Assembly (NCBI GenBank): GCA_964035545.1
Contig: OZ037767.1
Location: 4,976,707 to 5,040,706 of the forward strand
Length of the DNA stretch: 64,000 nucleotides
Source: Bugula neritina
Taxonomy: Eukaryota > Animalia > Bryozoa
Direction of reading: 5' to 3'
Shown piece by piece: positions 11,625 through 29,196 of this stretch; position 1 is the first letter of the stretch, and each line of letters starts with the position of its first letter. A model generated the notes under the pieces. The model searched no databases. It saw nothing but the letters and a program-made list of their open reading frames with translations, and was not told the DNA's origin. The translations under genes and the position numbers were made by a program.

Positions 11625-14600
11625 ATGGTGAGTATGCAAAGATACTATCTGAGTACAGGGTCAATAGTTGCTGAGCTCTACTGTTCTATATACAACATGT
11701 TTCGCACAACTTTGTGCCTCGTAGATGTTTTACACGGGTTTTGTTTTTGGCTTTACGTCGATTTTACTTTATGTAAGTACTTTGTGAAAAATTAAATTTA
11801 TAGTCTTTACTCATGTAGTTCAAGTTTTAATTGGTATTTTGTTTAATTTAGGGGAACGAGTCCTCATTACCCATGGAACTGGTGACGAACTGTAAGTAAC
11901 ATGCTATAGTAAACATTTCAATGTGTATAATTATAGACTGTTGTGGTCCATTTGTGTATTTGAGTTTATCTGCCAGTTATACACAGAGGTTTATGTGCCA
12001 GTCTTGTACATGTGATATAACTTTGTTGAAGTATGCATTCACCATGCTGTGTTAGGTTATGTAGTTTTATTATTTTTTGTTTTTGCGAATCGAGGCAGAA
12101 TTTTTTCTTCAAGTCTCAAAAATAAAATATTCTGTTACATATGCAATGTCAAAGCCCTATGATAAATCTGGTTTAGTCTGTAGCACCTATAATCGTAAAC
12201 ACGGAGTCAGTAGTTTGAATTCTGTAATAGGCTAATGGGGATGTTAGAATATAAACAAATTCTCTGCCCACTTAAAAAGGCCCAAGTGTTCTCACAGGGA
12301 TGGAGATTTTAAAAAAATAGCATGAGTAACGCTACCTATGCAGTACCATAGCCAAGTAGGTGAGCATGTATATATTGCCTACAATCATGATTACAGTTGA
12401 TCCTGATGAAATCAGGCGACTTGGGAAGAGGTTTAAGAAGTTAGATCTGGACAATAACGGAGCATTGAGTGTGGATGAGTTCATGTCTCTTCCCGAGTTG
12501 CAGCAGAACCCCCTGGTTCAAAGAGTCATAGATGTGTTTGACAGAGATGGAAATGGGGAAGTAGACTTCAAAGGTTTGTCACTCTCTTTGTTTATATCCT
12601 TCGTGCAAACCAATATATTTCTGCTGTATGATCAGTCTGGTGTAGGTAGGTAGGGTGTTTGGAGTTGTCGTCTCATCATCATTCTACTACCACCATTATG
12701 ATGGTGAGTGTTTATCTGTAGTGAGTATTAGCTCTAGTAGCTACTCATCACTTTATGTACTAGATCAGTGTATTTATTCCTAATGCCATGGTAGTTATCT
12801 TCTTTTTAGCGACCAAATCAGCAACAAATAGTTCTTTTATTCTTAATGTGAGAAAATATGTTTCTTATAAAGAAACAGCAACATGTTAAACAGAGCAGTT
12901 GAAAATGAATTTTAATTTTCTAGCTAGTTGGCCTACCATTACTCAAAGATATTTGGGCTAAAATTGTAATGCACTTTAAATAGAAGTTTTTTTAAACTCA
13001 TGTTTAATGATTTTTTTTTTCAGAATTTATAGAGGGAGTGTCTCAGTTCAGTGTTAAAGGGGACAAATCATCAAAACTTCAGTGTAAGTCTAAACTTAAC
13101 ATAACACGATGAGCTAAGTGTAAGTCTAACCTTAACATTATAATAATGTTAGTGCAAAAACTGCTAGATGGCTTTATTTGCTCCCTATTAAAACTTTAAC
13201 TCCAAAATGCAAGACTAGTGTTAGTTTCGTAAGCTTTCACTGTGTACTATCTCTATGCTTTATAATTATATATAATATATCTTAAAAACTTTGTTAAAAG
13301 TAAATGAGAAACATTTTTTATTTACTACTGTATGCTTTATAATTATATATAAATATGCATAATATATCCTTACCAGTTAGTAACTTTATTAAAAAAAATG
13401 ATTAACATTTTTTATTTACTACTTTAGTCATATAGATCAATAAAGTAAATTTGTATTTCAGTTGTACCACTGTATCCATCTTCAGAGTTAATTACAATTA
13501 ACTCTGTAGATGTATAGTAGTAAATGAAAAATATGTCTCATTTATTTTTATTAAATATGTATAATATATTTATATAAATAAGTTAAAAAAAAATTCCTCT
13601 TTTATATTTTTTCTGGCTGGCACCCATTTATAAACCATATTTACTCGTTAACATTTGTAATGTAAATGACAGGTAGCTCCTCAAATAAGTTCTATAAATA
13701 GTATAGTGTCAGTTGCTATTAGAATTGTCTCCCTCTAATTTCAGTCGCCTTCCGTATCTATGATATGGATAAGGACGGGTATATTTCTAATGGTGAGCTG
13801 TTCCAAGTGTTGAAAATGATGGTGGGGACAAATCTCAAGGATACTCAGCTCCAGCAAATAGTAGATAAAACTATTATCTTCGCAGACAAAGATGGTGACG
13901 GAAAGATATCGTTTGAGGAGTTTTGTGAGGTATGAAAATACTAGCCAATCAAATTTGTGTAGGTTTCAGGTATTTCTATGAGTGTGACTTGATAATAATA
14001 ATTCTCTGGGTTTGACTTTAAGTGTGACTATAACTCTATGAATATGACTATGAGTATGACTCTATGACTATGAGTATGACTCTATGACTATGGGTATGAC
14101 TCTATGACTATGAGTATGACTCTATGACTATGAGTATGACTATGAGTATGGCTCTATGAGTATGACTCTATGACTATGAGTATGGCTCTATGAGTATGAC
14201 TCTATGACTATGAGTATGACTCTATGACTATGAGTGTGGGGTATACCAAGGAGAAGATGTATTAGTGTACTTTACTGGTTTCTATCAGTGAATTAGCGTC
14301 ACATGAGGTTCTCATATATTCGACTTGACTGTGATTTATTGCAGTGTAATTATTAATCCACCAGCACCCTGTTTTAGCTTTTGTCATTTTACTATATGCC
14401 ATGATATGTTTTTTTTTTTATATTTGCAACCGTTATTTTATGAAGCGAGCACCATATTAGATATTCTACCCTAGTCTAATATTGCTAAAACATTTTCAAT
14501 TTAGAATAAAAATTTTCTGTTGAAAACTGTAATTTCTGTTTGAATTCTAGTGTTTTGTGGCTTGAAGTACGATTTGCTCAGCAAGCAGCAGATGAGGAAC

Positions 14601-16660: not shown

Positions 16661-18299
16661 CAATATTTTTTGTCTGCAATTTAATGAGTGATCAATTATT
16701 ATGTGTAAACTATCATGTGTAAATTATTATGTGTTTTGTTTGCTAATTTATTTTCTTTCTCAAACTTTCTGGATCTATGCCATGCACAGTTTTTTTAAAT
16801 CTATGAACTTGGATCTTTTTATTGTAATGTCTTGAATTTTTTGCACTTAGCATCTTGGAGCTTATATCTGTATATATTTATTTTATAATAATTTATAGCT
16901 GCCAGCAATATATAATTCATGAGTGCAGTAGCCATAACCAATGGCATTGTTTCAATATAAATTGTGCATCTAACCACGCTAACCAAGTCAAGTTCTCTGG
17001 TAGACAAAAAGTCTCTAAGTCAAGTTGATGAATGACTTGCCTTGTACCTATTTAAAAAGATACATACAATCAATAGAAGTTGAAACATAGTTACATACAC
17101 TTAGCACGTAGATGAAAAGAATAAATTTTTAGTTTCCGGTCTAGCCCATTTAAAAAGATATATGTTTAATAATTAAATTAAAAATAAGTTTGCTTTTAAT
17201 TATTAATGGTCATTGAATTACAATATAATCATTAAGTATCTCTAATGACATTCAAATTTTGGTCAATTACTGAAATGCTCATCTAAATACTTGTTAGAAA
17301 TGTCAGAAACTAGACTATGGAATTTGGTTCTTTGATTCATGAAAGATTTTGAGGGCTTGTATGGGTCAATCTTTATTGTCAAATCAATGATTTTACTGAA
17401 CTGACTCAAGTGAAGGAATTTCCAGCACTCCCGCTAGCAAAGCTTTAAGTCAGCCATATTACTTGGACCTACCTCTGCCAGTAATTTTTCAGAATTGTTA
17501 TAAATATGAAAGCTTAATCTGGAATCATAAGTATTATTAGAATAAAATTTGAAGTAATATTTCTGTGGCTTGCCAAGCAGGTGTAATAGAAAGTCTCAGT
17601 CACAATTGGAAATATAAAAAATAATAAGGTTACATAAAAATAATATTAGGCAAATGTCAAATTTACAAGCCATTTAATCTATAAATATTGCTACCATTGA
17701 TTTTAATCAAATGTAATTCTACACCACTATGCTATGCTAAGTTTCTGAGAACATTTGGAAAGAGTCTATGCATTCTAGCTTTGATAATTATTTTGCCTCA
17801 TTTCATGAAATTAATTTCTATTTGTATCTATCTGGTAGCGTAACTCACTTGAGAATTTTATGACTGTGTTTTGTAACATTTTCAGCAATCTACTATGTAG
17901 ATGCAGCTAATTCATTGGGGAGCTCTTAAACCCATTTCCAGCAAGTCAGACAACATGTATGTTAGTTAGGGTCTTCGGCAATATGGTATATGATTTCATC
18001 TTGTTTTCTCGTGGGGTTTAGTATTCAAAATTCTTGAGCATCAATACCCGTAGTTTTGCTGCCTAAAATCAGGTCAACGAAATGTTGACATTAATGGCAG
18101 CAGTAATGCATGACTTAGGCCATAGTTATGTGTTTTGCATGGTATTGTTAATGTTTTTAACAATTGAACTCTTGTGTGCTGATTTCTTTCTCCTGGCATT
18201 TTCACTGGGTCCCCTGAGACAATGGTTATTGCCTCAGCCATCCCACTGAGCTTTCATGACGTTGTAGATTCAAATTCCTGCTCTCTGAATGTGTGGTTA

Positions 18300-19809
18300 A
18301 TGGAAGATCATTTCCTTTCTACACATGCTACTTGGGTATCTCTAGTTGAAGGTATCTTATCTATTTCAGTGCCAACAGGATTTAGTTTCTCTACTTGCTG
18401 TCTAATACATTTCTATTATTCAGTTGCATTTTTAGATACATAAATTGAAGTTGTTGCCAAAAACCAAGTTGAGCAAATTTTACCTTCGAAATGTTCTGTG
18501 GTATCACTATAATGATAAACTTTATTTTACCCACCTTCTGACATTTAGATGCCTCATAGATTGCTCTTCTAGTACCCATTCTTCTGTTTAAATCAAACAT
18601 CTTCATATGTTTCAATTTGTTTTTACTTGAAAACCATAAATATATTGTGTAAGCTTTCATAATTTGTTTTAACCATAAATTTAAAAATACGAAAAATTTT
18701 GCAGATTAGAATAAATTTATACATTTTCAAGTAATGAAAGTGCTTTCACCATGTTTATTTCCTAAAGTTTGAGCACAATGTGTTTTGTTTGTCAAATTTG
18801 CAGGCTATAAAATCTATACATATGTAGTTTTGTTCAATGATTAATTCTAATGGAATTTTTAATAAATGTTTTAGACTATTTGATCAAGAAATCATCTGAC
18901 ATCGACACTGTGTTACTGTTCTCTTTACACGGTGATCTTATTCACTCTTTTGGCTGCAGCTTTAATATCTCACAGGTATCAATATTCTGTATCTCCAAAA
19001 CTCTTTTCCAACTTGTGAATATCCACTGATTGAGATTTCCTTCAACTTGTTAGGTCAGGTTTTTGATGTTAGGAATGATTCTATGATTAATAGCTATGAG
19101 CCTTAAATAGTTTCTTTGGCAATAAAAAATATCACATCAAGTTTTATAGGTGTTTCTCTTCTATTTTTGTGTAGGAAGAATTCGGACAGGTAAAAGCTTT
19201 GCTGACTACAAACACAACGGAAAGTCAATTTGTCTGGCAGCATACTAAATACACAGTAGTCAACAGAGCTAGCTGTTCAAAGTGAGTTTTCATTAATGGC
19301 TGAAATATTGGTATCTAGTTTTCATAGATCAAATAACCAAAGAGTGAGTACATGGGCACTTTAGAGGCCCATTAACTGCATCTGTACATCTTTAGTTTGG
19401 TTTATTTCTAAAGATTTTTGTTGCAATGGAAATGGCTTGTCATTTCAGCGGCTTTTATATATTTGCTAAAATTGTAAATAATGTCTTCCAACCCCATTAT
19501 GCAGCATCACTGGAAAAGATTGTAAAGTGTGTCTCAATTCTACAGGATTGCTTATTACCTCCTACCCGCATGCCTAACAAATCATCTCTTTCTAATTAAA
19601 CTATCTCTAGATTCTGCACTTACTGATCTGTGTATTCAGTTTGCTCTGTCTGCTGTAGTTTGTACGCCACGAGTCATAGGAGGCAGTCTGGTGTCTCTGT
19701 CCATCTACTAGATCAGGCCATTCTCTGCTGTATTCACAACAAGAAGGTTGTACCCTCTGGCTTCTGTGAAACTGCCTTTCGGTTTGCTAGCTTACTTTCC
19801 TCACCGTGA
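18300..19809 (+). CDS. Divergent profilin-family protein (136 aa)
   Basis: Exons 18300-18351, 18875-18975, 19175-19281, 19659-19809 (411 nt, phases 1/0/2 consistent) give MEDHFLSTHATWVSLVEDYLIKKSSDIDTVLLFSLHGDLIHSFGCSFNISQEEFGQVKALL..FVWQHTKYTVVNRASCSNLYATSHRRQSGVSVHLLDQAILCCIHNKKVVPSGFCETAFRFASLLSSP*. This matches the profilin pattern (N-helix W..YL, G-x7-F-x4-E, KY-x-V, G-V-x-V, AIL, C-terminal helix) and size. Confidence 0.78.
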
Positions 19810-19818
19810 CAGACAAAA

Positions 19819-20381
19819 ATGAGCTCTTCGTCTCAGGGCAACGTGGTAAGTTTTCCAGCATGTACTGTCTGCCAGATATTCAGGAGTGCGCTAGTATCTA
19901 TGCATGTGCATGACCATGTTATTTGTTTTACCGGTAAAACTCAATTGTTCAGCAGAAATATTTTGTAAGGAGTGTATTTTGTGTCATGTTGAAGTTTTGT
20001 AACATCATCAACTAAGTACTTAAGATAAAACTGTGCCAAGCAGTCTTTCTACCATTACTGATGGTTTATTAAACACATTTGTTCCCTACATCAATTTAGA
20101 CTATCTCTAAGTTTGCATATACTTATTCTAGAATCATATTATCATTAGCATCTTCACCTTGACCTTCACCATTTGTCTTACTCCAGGTAGATGATAATGA
20201 CCTTGACCCGGTAGAGTCTAGCTTACAGCGGATTCGCTGTTTAGAGAAGCACTGGGCGGTACAAGAGTGCTATGCTGATCATAAAGATTGGCGAAAATGT
20301 CAAACTGAAGTTAAAGACTTTAAAGACTGTGTTAGCAAGTCTAAAAAAGTTGATTCGCCTAATTCTTCTGCGAAACACTGA
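19819..20381 (+). CDS. COA4: Cytochrome c oxidase assembly factor 4 (twin CX9C, CHCHD8/Cmc3)
   Basis: Exons 19819-19845 and 20187-20381: MSSSSQGNV|VDDNDLDPVESSLQRIRCLEKHWAVQECYADHKDWRKCQTEVKDFKDCVSKSKK..*, with twin CX9C and the DWRKCQ signature. Confidence 0.92.
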
Positions 20382-21455
20382 CAGTGTGTTTTTTCCGGAG
20401 GTGAACTTGTGTGTTCTGGTAGTTGTATAATCTAGCTCAATTTGAAAATGTGTAGTGTGAAGTTTGAAATCATGTTAAAAGATGTGATGGCATTTAAACA
20501 CAACTATGCAATGCTAATTTTGGTGATCAATAACCTTCACAGTGATCAATAGGCAGCAATTGGTTGAATTCAATAAATGTCTTTCCACAATTGGTAAGCC
20601 TCACTGTTTCCAGTACTTATTGATGATATTGAATAAGTTTGTAATAGAATTGGTTATTGTGGTTTCTATGGTTACTATTGTGAACTGTGTCTAACTCAAG
20701 CTAAATTTGTTTTACTGTTTGCTGTGCTATAAATATTACAAGCAAAAGTTTCATGTTTCTATTTTAAAATATGCATATCTCTATATTAAAATAAATTTGT
20801 TTGTTTATTGAGAAAAAACTGTCCCATTTATTCTTATTTAATTCTCTCATACCAAATGAAAACTTATGTGAAGCCTTTCTCCATAACACCAGTCTTTAAG
20901 TTCACTTTAACTGTCATTTCTGAGCTCAAAACCAACATGCAAGCATTAGTCTCACAATAGACACACAAGTGCTGTTATGTAATCCCAATATGAGACCACA
21001 AGCGTTACAAGCAGCAAAAAGTATAAAATCTATTCGTTATGCGACTCCTTTAACCACAGTATTTAAGCATTTTAATTTTGAAAAATGAACCTGATTTTGC
21101 ATTTTTTTCGGAGAAAGTAATATAATTATGGCTTGCAATAAACAATTGGATGAAATAAATTAACCTATAAAATTGTCTCAATTGCATGTAACATCTCAAA
21201 TGCTAGAAACTTAAATTCCTCATATCCGTTAGTTTATATTTTTGGCTAATAAAACAAATAAATATGCTAAAATTATCTATTTTCTTGGTCTACCTTAATA
21301 TGAGCATCTAAGGTAAAGTTTCAGAGAACGTTTTCAAGTATCACATGATGTGCTAATGCAGATTTCCAATCTGACGTATAGTGATCAATATGTAGTTGTT
21401 GTTTAATAATGCAGTTATATAACATGCTGTAAGCTCACTCTAAATAGACCTCAGG

Positions 21456-21528: not shown

Positions 21529-24500
21529 ATGGCCTCCGTAATAAACGTGACCAGATATAATGTGGCTAATTCAGATAATGTGACCAACTTTCCATTGAAT
21601 TTACAAGATTATTTGACAGACTATATATTGGGTAAGTAAACATTAATATTATCTTAATTGTGGTAATATATTTGAAAAGTCTGGGGGTGGAAGTAAAGTG
21701 TTGAATTTTTGTGAATTATTTGGGTTCATCATAGAGTAGATACGGTAACTCTCTTATTATGATGCACTGAGAGCATCATATATTACATACACACAGCTTT
21801 ACCATAGCATTCATTGCATTTTCTCATGATCTTGTATGCTAATGAAGCTGATCACTGCCAGTTCTCTTCATAGATTACATATAATTACAATATACTCTTG
21901 TTACTCCCATGCTATGAGATATTTTATAGTTCAGTTAAGTGTCAATAAAAATATTGATGGGGTTAATAATATCAGCTAAAGTTGCTGAGAAGTTACATGC
22001 TGTATCAACCTTTCATGTTGAGAGTAAAAAGAGGCACTCTAAACGGTCAGCTAAGTTTCAACAGTAAACAATCACTACATTTTTGTGGCCAGGAATACCA
22101 TAAGCTCAAACTGACTTACTATATCATTATTAGTTAGTATCTAGGATATTGGTTAGCTTAGATAAATATTTGAATTTAGAACTTTGTTAAAAGTTAGTGA
22201 TAGCAGCAAACTAACTGTATTTGTTTTATAAATATATTCGCTCATTATAGTGCATTAAAACTTATAGAATCTGTAACTCATTGATGGGCAGTGGCCATGC
22301 TATTTGTATATAAGATAAGAGAAGACTAGCCAACAATCAACAATTTCAATTAGCTCAAAGTTAAAAAAGGCCATGTTTTTGATTTCAAATAATAATAACT
22401 TATTAATAACTTATTAAATTGGTAACTTAAAATGTGTTGTGTGTCTGAAAATTAAAAGCTTAAAGTTTCTAAATTCTGTCATTCAACTTCAAACATACTT
22501 TTGAATGAACAATTAGGCTTCAAAACTTCACTTTCAAAACTTATATTCTGGTCTTTGAAAAGAATTCTTATGTAATTCTGCATCAGTTCCTTAAAATATA
22601 TATATTAACAATACATTGAAACTTTCCATATGGAGGCTATTTTAAACAACTGCATACCTACACTATACAGTGTTTAAGACACGATATTTACATGGTTGTC
22701 AGCATACTCCTTGTGTTCCAGGACTTCTGCTCTTATGTCTGATGCCCCTGGGGGTGGCAGCTAATGCTACTACTATATACCTCTTCACCTCAAAAAGCAG
22801 GCGACACCTTCACACCAGGACTACATTTCTTCTGCGTAGCTTAGCTCTGAGTGATGGAGTTATGGCCCTTGTAGGCAGCAGTATGTTCAGTATTAGCTGT
22901 CTAAACCATGCATGGATATTTGGTAACGTAGGTGCGTTTTTAATTTACTTGAAACATAATATTATTATAGCCCATGAGCTCAATATAAATATTTGATGTG
23001 TGACTTTAAAAATAGAAATATAGATTTCAGAGGCACATTGTCGGTCAGGGAATGAAATTGGTATTGATGATAACCACTAGGACACAGTGCCCTATAGAAT
23101 ATTCTAGAAACTAGGTGTAAGTGCTCCCATGGGTATTTCATTTTCAATTATTGCATTAAAATTGTATCATGGAAACTCAAAATTATTTCTCTTGCAAGTA
23201 GTTTTTATAGAGCTGCAAGGTTTTTTGTCAATACAATTCATCTCATTAAACCAGTAAACTTATATAAGTATTGTAAAAGGAGTTGAATGCAATAACTATG
23301 TAGATGGAATCTGTTGAAATATAATATGTAAATGAAGAGTTTGGTATCAGAAAATTCTAAATGATTTGTAACTTTGCTTTTTATTTAAAAAGAAAAAACA
23401 ACTTATTCGCTATAGTCAACTTAGAGTAGACATTGCATATTATATCAATTACAAACCTAAGTTCTGATATAGCTCAGAAGGTTGTTTAGCAATAAAAGAT
23501 AGACTAATATATTGACTTCTCAGATCCTATTTTGAGGTTCTATCTATGGCAGTGTCAAGTTTAATTTTAGTCTAAAATAGCAAGGTTACCTGCCACAGGT
23601 GCAGTAGCATAGTGCATTTGATAAACTTATTATTACAAAATCATTCTGAATTTCACAAAAAGATTTTGTGCATGACTGATTACTCACAATAGAATTGATT
23701 GTTTTTCAGTCCCTGTAGAACCCAATTTATTAATTTTTTATTACAGACAAAAATTGTTATGTAAGTAAATCTGCATATATTTTTTCAAATTTACTGCTTG
23801 AGGCTTCAAAAATAAAATAGTTGAACTATAATTGAAAACTGAAATGAATATTTTATGCTTGTAACTGCATACACAATTAAATATAAACATTTAGTCCTCT
23901 AGGACACTGCAGAGACTGGTTATTAGGAGACTGCAGAGACTGGTTGCAGTCTCATGGTCTGCGTACACTGTTACAGGCTGCAAGTTCCATGGCATGATAA
24001 TGTTCTGGTGTGGGGTGACCTCAATAGCCCACCTCTGCGTTATATCCATAGAACGCTGTGTGACCATGAGCAACCCAATGTGGTCGGTCGCAAACCGAGG
24101 AAAAATACCTCTATATGTTGGAGCTATGGTCATCTTCTGCTGGGCTTTTGGGCTATTCTGGGCAGTTCTTCCTCTAGTAGGTAAGACAACTACCATCTTG
24201 GCAGGAAATGGTATATAGATTTGAAGTGTTTGAATGTCCTGACACTGCATTGCAGTGCTTCAAGCCATTGATTAGGCCTAGGAACGTTAAATTCATTATT
24301 TATACTCACTGCAAGCATAAAGGAATTATTATTTAATTGTTAATTAAAGATGAAAATGAGTGCCATTAATTGTATCTAAACATAAAAAATTTAACTTTGA
24401 CAGCTAAAATATTTTTTATTAAGTGGCTTGTCAATATTGAAATTTAATTTTTGAAGTAATTTATATTGATTTAGGGATTGCATACAATGTGCATTTAGCT

Positions 24501-26655
24501 GTTACGTAGTTTATCACAATATATATGCAGCTCTATACATATAATAACGAATGTATTTAGTTATTTCAAGCAATACAACATGCAGTACATTTATTTAATG
24601 TTACCTCATACTTGTATGTTATATGCAGGTAAATTAGTGGCGGTTATCTTAAACACCAACTTGTAGTTGGTCCATGATTTGTAGCAAATTTTAATATTAT
24701 ATTTAAAGGATTGCTCTATCTTGTCTAATAAATGGCCATTTAGGTCAAACACACATAATATTGTGTTTTTCTAAGCATGCATTGACAAAAAGCATTTGAC
24801 CAAAGGTAGAAAAAGTTAGTTGAAGTTGAGGGTGTAGATTGGTAACAGTCAAAACGCCGATTTTGAAATGAGCTGGGAACTGTGACGTAACAGCGCCAGC
24901 ATTCCTGCTGGTCACGTGACTATACAAATGAATAACTATAGAAATATGACTGTGAGATGTGATCTTTCAGCTCGTAATTTGTATATTTATAGAAGTGCAA
25001 ATGTGAATTATCTCAATCTATAGTTTTTTGACATGTTAAATAACATGTATGTGATAACATTAGGCCATATTTTGCTTGTAAACATAGAAAAAAGCATTGC
25101 AAAAACATGCATTCTTTAGGATGAATGCCTGCGATCGATCTAAACTAGGTCAGATTGTGCAATATTACGGGCGCACCAAAGCTGACCTATATAGCGCACT
25201 GTAACTGCTTGAGCGTTATTGGTTGATGTTGCGCTCAGCAACCTTGAATACTAGCGTTATAGTTAGCACGTGCAGCATAGTTACTGGCGTTCACACGTCA
25301 CGTATTAGGCTATTCTTTTTCATGGCTGAAAATTTTACCTCCCTCAAAATTGGAATTTTGAAAAGCTGTTTTCTAGGCATATATCCCTTTGCAAAGTCAC
25401 AATTGTTTGCATACACATTAGATTATAGTTCATAATTATAATGTGATTGTAATAAACTAAGATAGAGTAATCTTTTAATATTATTATTATATTGTATATA
25501 GAAGAGATTATTTATACCATATAGTGATAAAAGTCTTATATAAATATAGGCTTATAAAATATTTGAAGAATAAAAAACATCCTTATTACATAAATTTCAC
25601 TCTAAGAATATCTGAAATGGCCTCAGGCAATTAATTAACCGTCCTAAAACACTGTAGTTAAAAATTTAATATATCGCTGACAATTTATCTTTTTTACAAT
25701 AGCTACGGCATAGTGATAGCCTGCTTACTAATTTCTTTCTATATACCCTGACCACATGTGTTACATACCAGTAATAATTTTACTATATTAACAATATTGA
25801 ATACAAGTTTGTCTTTGTTCAGGAGTCCAGAGTTACAGTCTTGAGGGGCGTGTGTCTTGCTCCCTCAACTGGTCCAACAGAGATGTCAACTACATAGCCT
25901 ACAACACGGCTATATTCATCTTCGTGTTCTTCATTCCTGTGGTTATCATCATATGTGGCAACTTGACTATGTACAGAGTGGTAATTATACTTTTTGAGAT
26001 ATACCTGTGCAACTTGTAGTTAGAACTCGCACTGTATATAGTATAGTATGAATGGAATAACACCCCACCCGTAAGTTTACACTCTTGCAGGGCCAACTGG
26101 CTTAGCCGTTATAACACCACCAGGTGAATCCTGATAAGGAGGCTGCATGGTGAGGCACATGCAATTTCTAATACGGCTAAACTATCTTAGACGTTACTTT
26201 AGCATTGTCCTGCACTGGCCATTGAATAGCATCAAATCCTAATTTCACACATATCACTTTAACAAATCCTCCAAACCAATTTGCCGGTGTTATTTCTAGA
26301 AGCCACCAGGAAGACCAATGCTAATACCGCTTGTTGGCTAGTTGAATTGTATTTAGAGTTTTTGTCAAATGATTTATTGCTGATATTTTTACATAAACAA
26401 ATCTGTAGATAAATTACCACCCACAGGCCATGACGATGGCCTGTGGGTTGTAATTTATGTACTTTATCTCGTTTTCTTGACAAACTGAGTAATTTGCAAG
26501 CTTGGTTTTGAATTAGTACTTTCTGAATTAAATGAGAAAATATTGCAAATTTTGTTTGTTTGTGTTTTACCATTGCAATAACAAAATATTGAAACTAAAT
26601 ACAATTAACACACACACACACACACAAGCACACAAGCACACAAGCACACAAGCAC

Positions 26656-26721
<66 letters not shown>

Positions 26722-29196
26722 ACATCACATGCACACACACGCACACGCACGCATGCACACGCATGCACACGCATGCACACGCACACATATAATATGTATA
26801 TAATGTGTAGGTGAAGAAATCTCTTATGATGAATGGTAGTAATGCTATGCAGAAACAAAACCAGAAAACAGAGTCCCAGTTGACACGCACCATCATTCTC
26901 TCTACAAGTAAGATACTTTAAACATAAAGCTAACATTTGACTCACTCCGCACCTTTTTTATTAAAGGAGAAATTTCGCTTTATCTGTTAGCAAACTCAAT
27001 ATACAGGGGTAGCTCATTAAGAATTCTAGATCTTCTGATAATTTTCAATTTTATTGATTTGTTTTATCATGTTTATATAAGAATAAAGCAGCCAGAAACC
27101 CATGAATGACACACATAGACTGGTTGTATAATATAATGCTGAAGTGTAGACTGTAGGAGCAGACTGAGTATAATCAAAGCCGTGGCTGGTTGATGTGCTA
27201 TTGTGTATATTTCATACTGCAGGGCTATTTCACTACGATGTAGTCTCATTAACTAATTACTTAGTTATTGTAAAGTTGTTCCATCAACAGACCAATATAC
27301 TGAATATCATTTTATTTTGATGAGAGCTAAAGCTAAAGTTGGTTAATTGGGCTTACAAAATGCTGCTACACAAACTCTAGTTTTAATGTTCTTGATTAGA
27401 GCAATGAATTCACCATCTCCATTTCATATATACTTCATCACACTGTAATTTGTAGTATTTTATTTAATGGCATGGTCTCCGTATGCTTCTATTGCTATGT
27501 GGGCGTCTTTTGGCAACTCGAAGGCCATACCTCCGAACCTCATCACGTGGCTTGCCTTTCTGGCCAAAACATCTTTTGTGTTCAACCCGATAATATACAT
27601 GAGCAATAATGAACAGTACAGGTTGGTGACTTACATGGAGCTTTTACATACTGAAATTAATCCTTATTGTCAAATTGTTGTTGAAGCTTTTTACTATCTT
27701 CTCGAAAAGCATTATTTTAATTCAGAAATGTGACGTAATAGTGAATGCATGTACTAAGGTGGAAGAGGTGAAATGCCAACCCATAAAAAGAGTAGACTAA
27801 ATCATTTATTTATAGTTCTATAGTTGTCTACCTTTTTCTAAAGCATTCCCAAGAGAATTCCTTATTGCATGCAGGAAAACAAAAATATAGTAAAGGTGAT
27901 TTATTTACTATTAATAGAACCTATAAATGTTTAACAAGTTGTCAACCACTGAGACAGTTTAGTTTTAAAGAATACACTCTATGAATAATAAATGGCATTC
28001 CTCTAAAGTATAAGGTTTTCAATATATTTAAAAGAGGCTATTGAGACATGAGAAGACCTCTTCACTTGCGCCAAGCTAATTTGACTTGCAACTTTTATAC
28101 AATTATCTTATTTAATTGCCATAGCAATTCTTTAAGAATATAACTTAATGAGCCTGTGCCATATATGGTATTGCCATGATATTGCCATGAAATTACATTT
28201 ATCCCTAACTAAATTATATCAACAGGAGAATAACAATATATTGCTCTAAATGGGTTCCTTGCAAGCTGAGATAACCTTTACTTATAAAAACAGTTTGCAA
28301 TGAAATGAGATTCTAAATATTTAGTCTTATCACAGCTCAAAGCTGTAATAAAACTTAGTTTAGAGCTTTATTTATAATTTTATAAAAAAAATTCACTTCA
28401 CAAAAGCTATGTATATCTTTAAAAAGGTTGATTATTATTAAAAAAGACTTTATATATACACTTTTAGTTAATAGTTTATATAGCAGTTGTCTGTCCAATA
28501 AGCTGTGATAAACTATACACTATACAGGGTAGCATTAGAACAATGATAAAATATGTATGTACTTTGTAGAAAAGAAATATGCAAACTGATACTGAAAAGA
28601 AACTGGCTGAACAAATGCTGGAAAGATCGACTTAGAAGGGCTTCTACATTAGGGTCTGGAACAGGTAGCTTACTGTAGCATGTGGCTGCCTTCGTTACTT
28701 CCTGTATTTTCTGTGTTTACTGTTGTTACTATGGAGATCATCGGGTTTACTGTAACAATTGAAACATAGATTCAAGATGGGCAGCTTACTCTTTAAACAG
28801 CCCCCCTCTCCCTATCATTACAAAATCTACACAGCTTATTATTAGTCTGCCCAATTACAACAAATAATAACATAAAAACTATAAAACACTTGATAAAATA
28901 AACTAATAGTAGCATGGCATTTTAGCAGTTGAAAGTTTCTCTATAACTTAGTATTGCCATCAACGACTATCTTGTATATTGTAGATAAAATGAACACAGC
29001 ACAAGAAGATTTGCAATCACCAACTACATTGAAATGTAAAACAGCGGCCTATGAATACTCAGTAAGCCCACCGGATTCCTCCAATAATGTCGAAGTCAAA
29101 CAAGAAACACTCTCCTTACTAAATCATGCAACACTAAGTCTGTCAGGGGTGCATAACTCTAAAAGTGCCGTGCTGTACACTAGTCAACAGCTGTAA
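21529..29196 (+). CDS. Opsin (class A GPCR with retinal-binding Lys; NxQ-type, xenopsin/ciliary-opsin-like)
   Basis: 8 exons: 21529-21631, 22722-22931, 23977-24180, 25823-25980, 26811-26907, 27456-27621, 28570-28664, 28985-29196. Motifs LALSD, WIFGNVGCKFHG, ISIERC, YSLEGRVSCSLNW, AWSPYA, FLAKTSFVFNPIIY, NEQYR. Confidence 0.93.
24703..25478. mobile_element. Non-autonomous DNA transposon (MITE) with TTAA target-site duplication, Kolobok-like
   Basis: TTAA|AGGATTGCTCTATCTT ... AAGATAGAGTAATCTT|TTAA: 16-bp terminal inverted repeats (14/16 match), 768-bp body, CpG-richer interior, in opsin intron 3. Confidence 0.75.
26608..26790. repeat. (CA)n compound microsatellite
   Basis: Direct; explains the spurious HTHT/CVCV ORFs. 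Confidence 0.97.

What the first reader, a model, noticed from the sequence alone, without database searches (positions are those of the whole stretch)
18300..20381. Profilin-like gene and COA4 share an exon: stop-9 nt-ATG dicistronic or operon-like unit
Seen: the profilin-like ORF ends with TGA at 19807-19809, followed by cagacaaaa and the COA4 ATG at 19819, then a GTAAGT donor at 19846. There is no room for a poly(A) signal or promoter between them, so a spliced profilin mRNA should carry the whole COA4 ORF. The exon junction is only 36 nt after the profilin stop, inside the ~50-nt EJC rule, so it should escape NMD. The profilin C-terminal codons also form a pyrimidine tract ending in CAG (cttactttcctcaccgtgaCAG|acaaaaATG), a plausible alternative 3' acceptor 6 nt before the COA4 ATG. 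Inference: two unrelated proteins come from one transcription unit by reinitiation, by alternative cis-splicing from a shared leader, or by SL trans-splicing. Neither gene is recognisable in the supplied ORF track.
Basis: partly seen in the sequence, partly recalled or inferred. Interest (0 to 1): 0.82.

Follow-up and report, generated by a model that had tools for sequence, protein, structure and literature searches.

The report
Bryozoan two-gene messenger: profilin-like plus COA4
In this moss animal (Bugula) a divergent profilin-like gene and the only copy of the mitochondrial assembly factor COA4 lie 9 bases apart and appear on one spliced, leader-capped messenger RNA, an arrangement kept in a distant bryozoan, so the second protein is probably made by ribosomes that skip or restart after the first reading frame.

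Summary
A 4-exon, 136-aa ORF ends at TGA 19807-19809. A 2-exon, 73-aa twin-CX9C gene starts at ATG 19819, with a GTAAGT donor at 19846.

- **RNA evidence:** intron-free contigs from five runs of sibling Bugula neritina lineages use exactly these junctions. Single contigs run through both ORFs.
- **5' end:** the transcript carries a trans-spliced leader joined at 18268, 32 nt before the first ATG. No leader was seen at the CAG before COA4.
- **Identities:** ORF1 passes Pfam Profilin when read from a naturally spliced RNA contig. ORF2 is COA4 and is single-copy in this genome.
- **Conservation:** in Watersipora subatra (ORF1 48% identical) the stop and start overlap as ATGA.
- **ATG depletion:** in both species ORF1 has no internal Met and only one out-of-frame ATG, against 6-7 expected. 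Its start has T at -3, while COA4's has a purine.

Best reading: a true, conserved bicistronic mRNA, with COA4 translated by leaky scanning and/or reinitiation. A leader-resolved operon and an internal promoter are not excluded, because only contigs were available, not reads.

Other agents of this scan already reported the leader and four other two-gene messengers elsewhere in this genome.

The window's own exons were searched one by one.

The parts
17836..18267 (+). Outron: transcribed upstream sequence removed by leader trans-splicing. The acceptor AG is at 18266-18267.
   Evidence: Contig L009 / X1 record 2 runs colinear with the genome from 17836 to 18349. Contigs X2, X3, X4 and L010 leave the genome at 18266-18268.
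18268..18299 (+). 5' UTR after the spliced leader (32 nt). It holds a 3-codon mini-uORF at 18289-18300 (ATG TGT GGT TAA) whose stop shares its last A with the ORF1 ATG (TAATG).
   Evidence: The X2 loose end of 22 nt matches the leader genes with one mismatch. L010 begins AAAG followed by the exon.
18300..18351 (+). ORF1 (profilin-like) exon 1. The start ATG at 18300 has T at -3 and G at +4. An out-of-frame ATG at 18325 opens a 6-codon ORF.
18875..18975 (+). ORF1 exon 2, with no ATG in any frame.
   Evidence: Joints; ATG count
19175..19281 (+). ORF1 exon 3, with no ATG in any frame.
19659..19809 (+). ORF1 exon 4, ending in TGA at 19807-19809, with no ATG in any frame.
   Evidence: All listed differences from the RNA contigs are at third codon positions.
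19810..19818 (+). 9-nt spacer (cagacaaaa). It is 8 nt in sibling Bugula lineages, which have an in-frame ATGA overlap. In Watersipora the ORFs overlap by 4 nt.
19819..19845 (+). COA4 exon 1 (9 codons). The ATG has A at -3. The donor GTAAGT is at 19846.
20187..20381 (+). COA4 exon 2 with two CX9C motifs and stop TGA at 20379-20381.
20382..20818 (+). Shared 3' UTR. Contigs reach 20668-20818. AATAAA occurs at 20572 and 20790. The true 3' end was not determined.

Best explanation
**What it is.** A conserved, true bicistronic messenger. One primary transcript starts upstream of 17836 and is trans-spliced to the bryozoan spliced leader at 18268. It is then cis-spliced at four introns to give: leader, 32-nt UTR, profilin-like ORF (136 aa), 9 nt, COA4 ORF (73 aa), about 440-nt 3' UTR.

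**How COA4 is probably made (inferred).** COA4 is single-copy in this genome. It would be translated from this same mRNA by ribosomes that do not start at ORF1.
- ORF1's AUG is in weak context (U at -3), and a 3-codon mini-uORF ends on top of it.
- 40S subunits that leak past it, or that resume scanning after the mini-uORF, meet almost no other AUG for about 400 nt.
- They then start at the COA4 AUG, which is in strong context.
- The stop/start proximity (ATGA overlap to 9 nt) would also let ribosomes that finish ORF1 reinitiate.

**Shown versus inferred.** Shown: the gene structures, the splicing, the leader at the 5' end, contigs spanning both ORFs, conservation, and the AUG depletion. Inferred: that single molecules carry both ORFs, and the translation mechanism.
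For: **Both ORFs on one RNA**
- Single spliced contigs cover both ORFs: 3 of the 4 runs laid, plus a partial bridge in the fourth, and 2 Logan contigs fetched as loci, L009 and L010.
- No RNA coverage lies in the COA4 intron, and no poly(A) hexamer lies between the ORF1 stop and 20068.

**Leader at the 5' end**
- The leader is joined at 18268.
- At least 15 leader-plus-GT-donor sites exist in the genome, 14 of them on contig C8.

**Gene identities and copy number**
- COA4 has a single match in the whole genome.
- ORF1 scores 35.8 bits against Pfam Profilin, cut-off 25.

**Conservation**
- Watersipora subatra has the same 136-aa ORF1, aligned without gaps at 48% identity.
- Its ORF1 stop overlaps the COA4 ATG as ATGA.

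**Features that favour scanning past ORF1**
- ATG depletion of ORF1: 1 observed against 5.2-7.0 expected. P is 0.008-0.012 in Bugula and 0.005 in Watersipora.
- Neither ORF1 protein has an internal Met.
- The single internal ATG opens a 6- or 9-codon ORF that closes before COA4.
- ORF1's ATG has T at -3 in both species. COA4's ATG has A or G at -3.
- The same two signatures mark the leaky-scanning bicistrons of green algae (PMC11291117).
Against: - Only assembled contigs were available. A contig across two genes does not prove one molecule, and contigs drop rare variants, so a minor leader-COA4 mRNA could be missed.
- All RNA is from lineages 5-10% diverged from the window.
- With the protein sequence held fixed (synonymous-codon permutation), the ATG depletion is not significant (P 0.19). 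Much of the signal is therefore the absence of Met, which could be a family trait.
- Reinitiation after a 136-codon ORF is normally inefficient.
- No ribosome or protein data exist for either ORF.
Confidence: 0.62

Rival explanations
1. A leader-resolved operon. The bicistronic RNA would be a precursor or a by-product. Functional COA4 mRNA would be made by trans-splicing the leader to an internal acceptor, either the CAG at 19812 or one of the ORF1 exon acceptors. That would give an mRNA whose first AUG is COA4's.
For: - The organism has a spliced leader and uses it on this very transcript.
- A pyrimidine tract plus CAG lies 6 nt before the COA4 ATG.
- Exons 2-4 contain no ATG, so a leader joined to any of their acceptors would put COA4's AUG first.
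- An earlier, unchecked note of this scan reports such an internal leader junction at MED9-GEMIN6.
Against: - No contig in the 5 runs carries leader letters at 19813, 18875, 19175 or 19659. The only loose end at 19659 is the end of exon 3.
- No gene call for a leader-first 72-aa COA4 is on record.
- Watersipora has no AG within 34 nt of its COA4 ATG, and its ORFs overlap.
- ORF1 has no poly(A) signal.
- The fully spliced bicistronic form is the assembled form in every run.
Confidence: 0.2
2. Two overlapping but separate transcription units. COA4 would have its own promoter inside ORF1's intron 3 or exon 4. The contigs would merge two mRNAs that share sequence.
For: - De Bruijn contigs can fuse overlapping transcripts, as the tool's caveat says.
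- X3's contig 9 begins inside exon 4, at 19681.
Against: - ORF1 mRNA would still have to run through COA4. No poly(A) signal or intron coverage follows its stop.
- The X3 break coincides with a polymorphic codon at 19678-19680.
- Intron 3 has no coverage apart from one contig at depth 3.8.
- A separate promoter gives no reason for the ATG depletion or for the conserved ATGA overlap.
Confidence: 0.1
3. Fusion by stop-codon readthrough. In the window the COA4 ATG is in frame with ORF1 (TGA CAG ACA AAA ATG), so reading through the TGA would give one profilin-COA4 fusion protein.
For: The frame relation in the window: (19819-19807) mod 3 = 0.
Against: The frames differ in L008, L009 and L010, where the spacer is 8 nt and a second TGA follows. 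They also differ in Watersipora, where the ORFs overlap by 4 nt. The in-frame state is therefore private to this lineage.
Confidence: 0.02

Closest known systems
Leaky-scanning bicistronic mRNAs of green algae (Chlamydomonas, Auxenochlorella; PMC11291117). By my own knowledge, also animal cases such as MOCS2A/B and Drosophila Sloth1/Sloth2 (PMC9681215).
   Same: - Two proteins on one mature capped mRNA.
- A weak start context on ORF1.
- Depletion of ATG before ORF2.
- A short or absent inter-ORF spacer.
- ORF2 is a small mitochondrial protein, as with Sloth.
   Different: - ORF1 is the longer ORF and an unrelated cytoskeletal-family protein.
- The 5' end is a trans-spliced leader.
- An intron splits ORF2 20-36 nt after the ORF1 stop.
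- The mechanism is untested here.
Spliced-leader operons of nematodes, tunicates and chaetognaths (PMC12460157 and its reference Douris et al. 2010)
   Same: - A multi-copy leader RNA gene family with a GT donor.
- The leader is added to an outron acceptor.
- Unrelated genes share one transcription unit.
   Different: - No leader was seen on the downstream cistron.
- The upstream gene has no intercistronic region and no poly(A) signal.
- The mature assembled RNA remains bicistronic.
- I found no report of the leader in Bryozoa.
Termination-reinitiation at overlapping stop/start codons (the AUGA or UAAUG of caliciviruses and influenza B; my own knowledge)
   Same: The ATGA overlap in Watersipora and in sibling Bugula lineages, and the 9-nt gap here.
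   Different: - No 18S-complementary upstream element was looked for.
- The window's own lineage has lost the overlapping ATG (it reads GTGA).
- ATG depletion is not needed for that mechanism.

Membership tests
Profilin (Pfam PF00235) | Whole-protein score at or above the Pfam gathering cut-off (25 bits) | tested here: met
   L009:469-876, a naturally spliced RNA contig whose ORF1 differs from the window's ORF1 exons at 2 of the 135 codons compared, scores 35.8 bits, E 1e-8. The match covers profile positions 2-123 of 127. The Watersipora orthologue carries the same precomputed hit. The window's exons searched singly give no hit. The joined window model was not searched.
Profilin (Pfam PF00235) | Profilin fold: N- and C-terminal helices packed on an antiparallel sheet | tested here: inconclusive
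   The AlphaFold model from a 2-sequence alignment has pLDDT 51 and pTM 0.50. Its secondary-structure order is compatible. In Foldseek, roadblock/Ragulator and profilin chains are mixed, at E 0.007-0.05 and TM about 0.4.
Profilin (Pfam PF00235) | Actin-binding and poly-proline-binding residues | not tested
   No PDB sequence hit at E <= 1. The only relative in 1.84 billion representatives is Watersipora's, so this is a very divergent member.
COA4 / CHCHD8 twin-CX9C protein | Two CX9C motifs in a CHCH domain | tested here: met
   Exon 2 reads C-x9-C twice. Pfam CHCH scores 25.7-26.2 bits, just under its 27.2 cut-off.
COA4 / CHCHD8 twin-CX9C protein | Closest relatives are annotated COA4 orthologues | tested here: met
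   A profile search gave 150 hits. The named ones are almost all 'cytochrome c oxidase assembly factor 4 homolog', with E down to 1e-19. Atlas features score 0.94 to COA4 clusters. UniRef names the Bugula protein COA4.
Spliced-leader operon | Leader RNA genes with a splice donor, and the leader found on mRNA 5' ends | tested here: met
Spliced-leader operon | Leader trans-spliced onto the downstream cistron | tested here: inconclusive
   Not seen in contigs of 5 runs. Contigs cannot show absence, and raw reads were not available.
Spliced-leader operon | The upstream gene has its own 3' UTR and poly(A) signal before the trans-splice site | tested here: not met
   The stop lies 3 nt from the candidate AG. 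There is no AATAAA or ATTAAA from 19596 to 20067.
Leaky-scanning bicistronic mRNA | A weak ORF1 start context and ATG depletion before ORF2 | tested here: met
   T at -3 in both species. 1 ATG against 5.2-7.0 expected, P 0.005-0.012. Weaker when the protein is held fixed (P 0.19).
Leaky-scanning bicistronic mRNA | ORF2 output responds to the ORF1 start context | not testable with these tools
   Needs reporter assays or ribosome profiling.

The most novel reading that the evidence does not exclude
Cheilostome bryozoans may have a genome-wide class of leader-capped polycistronic messengers that are never resolved into single-gene mRNAs. Downstream proteins, here the sole COA4, would be made by programmed leaky scanning or delayed reinitiation through ATG-free upstream ORFs. 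That would be a third way of running animal 'operons', beside nematode-type resolution. This pair would have been kept since the Bugula-Watersipora split.
Probability: 0.35. Interest if true: 0.75.

Novelty: new member of a known kind. Interest (0 to 1): 0.6.

Why it matters
- **An essential gene as second cistron.** COA4 is a conserved mitochondrial cytochrome oxidase assembly factor. Here its only copy sits as the second cistron behind an unrelated, fast-evolving profilin-like gene. Its expression would therefore depend on non-canonical translation or on an unseen RNA processing step.
- **Annotation gaps.** Pipelines miss or mis-model such units. No COA4 gene call is on record at the Watersipora locus, and the NCBI Bugula model of ORF1 has a wrong last exon.
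- **A tractable system.** The other two-gene messengers and the leader noted by this scan are in a phylum where I found no report of trans-splicing. Together with this pair, they make bryozoans a good system for asking how animals translate unresolved polycistronic mRNAs.

Tried and rejected
1. **Exon-by-exon searches of ORF1.** Pfam and PDB searches of the window's ORF1 exons gave no profilin hit. Identification needed a naturally spliced RNA contig. I reached it through the COA4 protein cluster: P0001, then P0002, then L009/L010.
2. **Poly(A) site inside the COA4 intron.** The ATTAAA at 20068 has no RNA coverage.
3. **Stop-codon readthrough fusion.** It is in frame only in this lineage.
4. 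**Monocistronic leader-COA4 gene call.** A look-up of the 72-aa product found nothing on record.
5. **Fold confirmation.** The model is of low confidence and Foldseek is ambiguous.
6. **More species.**
   - The exhaustive protein search found only Watersipora.
   - The eight contigs L019-L026, from unidentified organisms with close COA4 homologues, show no ORF1 homologue upstream at E <= 0.01. Nothing follows from them.
7. **Synteny with the upstream calcineurin-B-like gene.** It is absent within 6 kb in Watersipora.
8. **Literature.** No paper with Bugula or Bryozoa reports leader trans-splicing.
9. **Left out by rule.** The window's own exons were never joined into a protein or mRNA for any search, fold or script. 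ATG counts and substitution counts on the window were done exon by exon.

Full report
**1. The observation**

- ORF1 start: an ATG at 18300.
- ORF1 exons: 18300-18351, 18875-18975, 19175-19281 and 19659-19809, all with GT..AG borders. They encode 136 aa and end in TGA at 19807-19809.
- Spacer: nine bases (cagacaaaa).
- COA4 exon 1: an ATG at 19819 opens a 27-nt exon, closed by GTAAGT at 19846.
- COA4 exon 2: it resumes at 20187 and ends in TGA at 20379-20381, giving 73 aa with two CX9C motifs.
- No AATAAA or ATTAAA lies between 19596 and 20067.

**2. RNA evidence**

One run search and one lay were allowed.
- Four runs from four studies hold spliced contigs 90-95% alike to the window.
- All show the joints 18351^18875, 18975^19175 and 19281^19659, and the COA4 intron 19845^20187.
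- Nothing covers the introns, so the runs are RNA, even though their records only let the tool guess that.
- In three runs a single contig (985-1468 nt) runs from before the ORF1 ATG through the spacer and both COA4 exons, to 20668-20818.
- In the fourth run a contig bridges ORF1 exon 4 to the COA4 3' UTR.

The COA4 protein cluster led to two such contigs as readable loci, L009 and L010.

Caveats:
- A contig across two genes is not proof of one molecule.
- Contigs drop rare forms.
- The RNA comes from lineages about 5-10% diverged from the window. The NCBI B. neritina assembly, L008, is 91% identical over this locus, with every splice site conserved.

**3. The 5' end is a spliced leader**

- Contigs X2, X3, X4 and L010 leave the genome at the acceptor tgtAG|att (18267/18268), 32 nt before the ORF1 ATG.
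- X2 continues with 22 foreign letters.
- That string, with one mismatch, occurs at 7 places in the genome and none in the window.
- At three of those places it is followed at once by GTAAAT, inside a conserved unit of about 200 nt.
- The leader end plus donor occurs at 15 or more places, 14 of them on contig C8 between 11.85 and 12.99 Mb. The reversed control pattern gives 0.
- This is a spliced-leader RNA gene family.
- L009 instead keeps 436 nt of colinear upstream sequence, the outron.
- I found no paper reporting leader trans-splicing in Bryozoa.
- Earlier agents of this scan had already noted the leader and four other two-gene messengers elsewhere in this genome. I used those notes as leads and verified the leader independently here.

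**4. What the two proteins are**

ORF1:
- The window's exons, searched one by one, gave no profilin hit.
- The ORF read from the naturally spliced contig (L009:469-876, 136 aa) scores 35.8 bits against Pfam Profilin, cut-off 25, over nearly the whole profile.
- Atlas features place 27 of 30 neighbours in profilin clusters.
- There is no PDB sequence hit.
- The AlphaFold model is poor (pLDDT 51) and its fold matches are ambiguous.
- ORF1 is therefore a very divergent profilin-family member.
- Purifying selection is clear: 15 synonymous against 3 non-synonymous codon changes between the window and L008.

ORF2:
- A profile search returns 150 relatives. The named ones are nearly all 'cytochrome c oxidase assembly factor 4 homolog'.
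- The Atlas agrees.
- The genome has one match only, this one.
- Canonical profilins lie elsewhere in the genome.

**5. Conservation**

- The exhaustive search of 1.84 billion representatives found one true relative of ORF1 outside Bugula neritina, the other real hit being the NCBI Bugula model itself. It is a 136-aa protein of the cheilostome Watersipora subatra, 48% identical and aligned without gaps.
- At its locus (L011) the same four exons are followed by ...ccgctATGAgtgac. The ORF1 stop TGA overlaps the COA4 ATG.
- COA4 exon 1 has 8 codons and ends in GTAAGC. Exon 2 lies 338 nt on.
- No separate COA4 gene call is on record at that locus.
- The sibling Bugula lineages (L008, L009, L010) have an 8-nt spacer and also an ATGA overlap. 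That ATG is in frame with COA4 and adds 3-4 residues.
- The window has GTGA and one extra A. The downstream ATG is therefore the start common to all Bugula lineages.

**6. How COA4 could be translated**

In the spliced mRNA, the stretch from the ORF1 start codon to COA4 holds a single ATG.
- Bugula: at +25, opening 6 codons.
- Watersipora: in exon 4, opening 9 codons.

| Test | Observed ATG | Expected | P |
|---|---|---|---|
| Bugula contig L009 | 1 | 5.2-6.6 | 0.008-0.012 |
| Window, exon by exon | 1 | 6.4 | 0.010 |
| Watersipora | 1 | 7.0 | 0.005 |

- Flanking segments of L009 hold 2.3-3.2 ATG per 100 nt, against 0.25 in the ORF1 body.
- Neither ORF1 protein has an internal Met.
- With the protein sequence fixed, the depletion is not significant (P 0.19). 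The signal is therefore largely the lack of Met.
- ORF1's ATG has T at -3 in both species. COA4's has A (window) or G.
- In Bugula a 3-codon uORF (18289-18300) ends on the A of the ORF1 ATG.

A weak ORF1 start and ATG depletion before ORF2 are the signatures shown to mark leaky-scanning bicistrons in green algae. The stop/start overlap also allows termination-reinitiation. I cannot separate the two mechanisms.

**7. Rivals**

- **Leader-resolved operon.** The leader exists, a CAG sits 6 nt before the ATG, and exons 2-4 are ATG-free. Against this:
  - no leader junction is seen downstream of 18268 in five runs;
  - Watersipora lacks a nearby AG;
  - ORF1 has no 3' UTR or poly(A) signal.
- **Internal promoter.** It would not remove ORF1's need to run through COA4, and it explains none of the conserved features.
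- **Readthrough fusion.** It is in frame only in this lineage.

**8. Verdict**

The specific alternative acceptor is unsupported.

It is a new, conserved member of the known class of eukaryotic bicistronic mRNAs. It occurs in a phylum with an apparently undescribed spliced leader, and several sister cases have already been noted by this scan.

**9. Rule compliance**

- The window's exons were never joined for any tool or script.
- Full-length searches used RNA contigs and database proteins that the tools returned.

Noticed in passing
L002, L006, L007 (G000:C8 12.19-12.44 Mb); 14 sites on C8 11.85-12.99 Mb: A dispersed cluster of spliced-leader RNA genes. The leader exon ends ...GTTGCATAAAAG and is followed by the GTAAAT donor. 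The unit folds better than shuffles (z -3.5). The block shared with L001 and L004 suggests an unusually long leader of about 68 nt.
   Followed up: partly
L001 (G000:C1:13823029) and L004 (G000:C5:10536277): Leader sequence followed, without a GT donor, by short ORF-bearing sequence. These may be retrocopies of leader-capped mRNAs.
   Followed up: no
L008 4369-5894 (NCBI EB796_023386, P0004) and L011: The NCBI Bugula model of ORF1 (167 aa) starts at an upstream ATG that trans-splicing removes, and it uses a wrong frame for the last exon. No COA4 gene call is on record at the Watersipora locus.
   Followed up: partly
window 17800-20900 versus L008, L009, L010: The window's genome is only about 91% identical to the NCBI B. 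neritina assembly here, and 90-95% alike to all RNA runs found. It probably belongs to a different member of the B. neritina species complex.
   Followed up: partly
L023 and L024 (Logan SRR31412027, SRR31412055): In an unidentified organism, a 72-aa COA4 homologue at the contig start is followed on the same strand, about 770 nt later, by a PTH2 (peptidyl-tRNA hydrolase) ORF. This may be another multi-gene transcript.
   Followed up: no
window 12360-13935 and 22670-27733: The neighbours are both on the + strand. Upstream is a calcineurin-B-like EF-hand gene. Downstream is an opsin-like GPCR, with a (CA)n/(GT)n microsatellite near 26600-26800. Low-depth RNA contigs cover 17300-18030, so the primary transcript of this unit starts at least 1 kb upstream of ORF1.
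   Followed up: no
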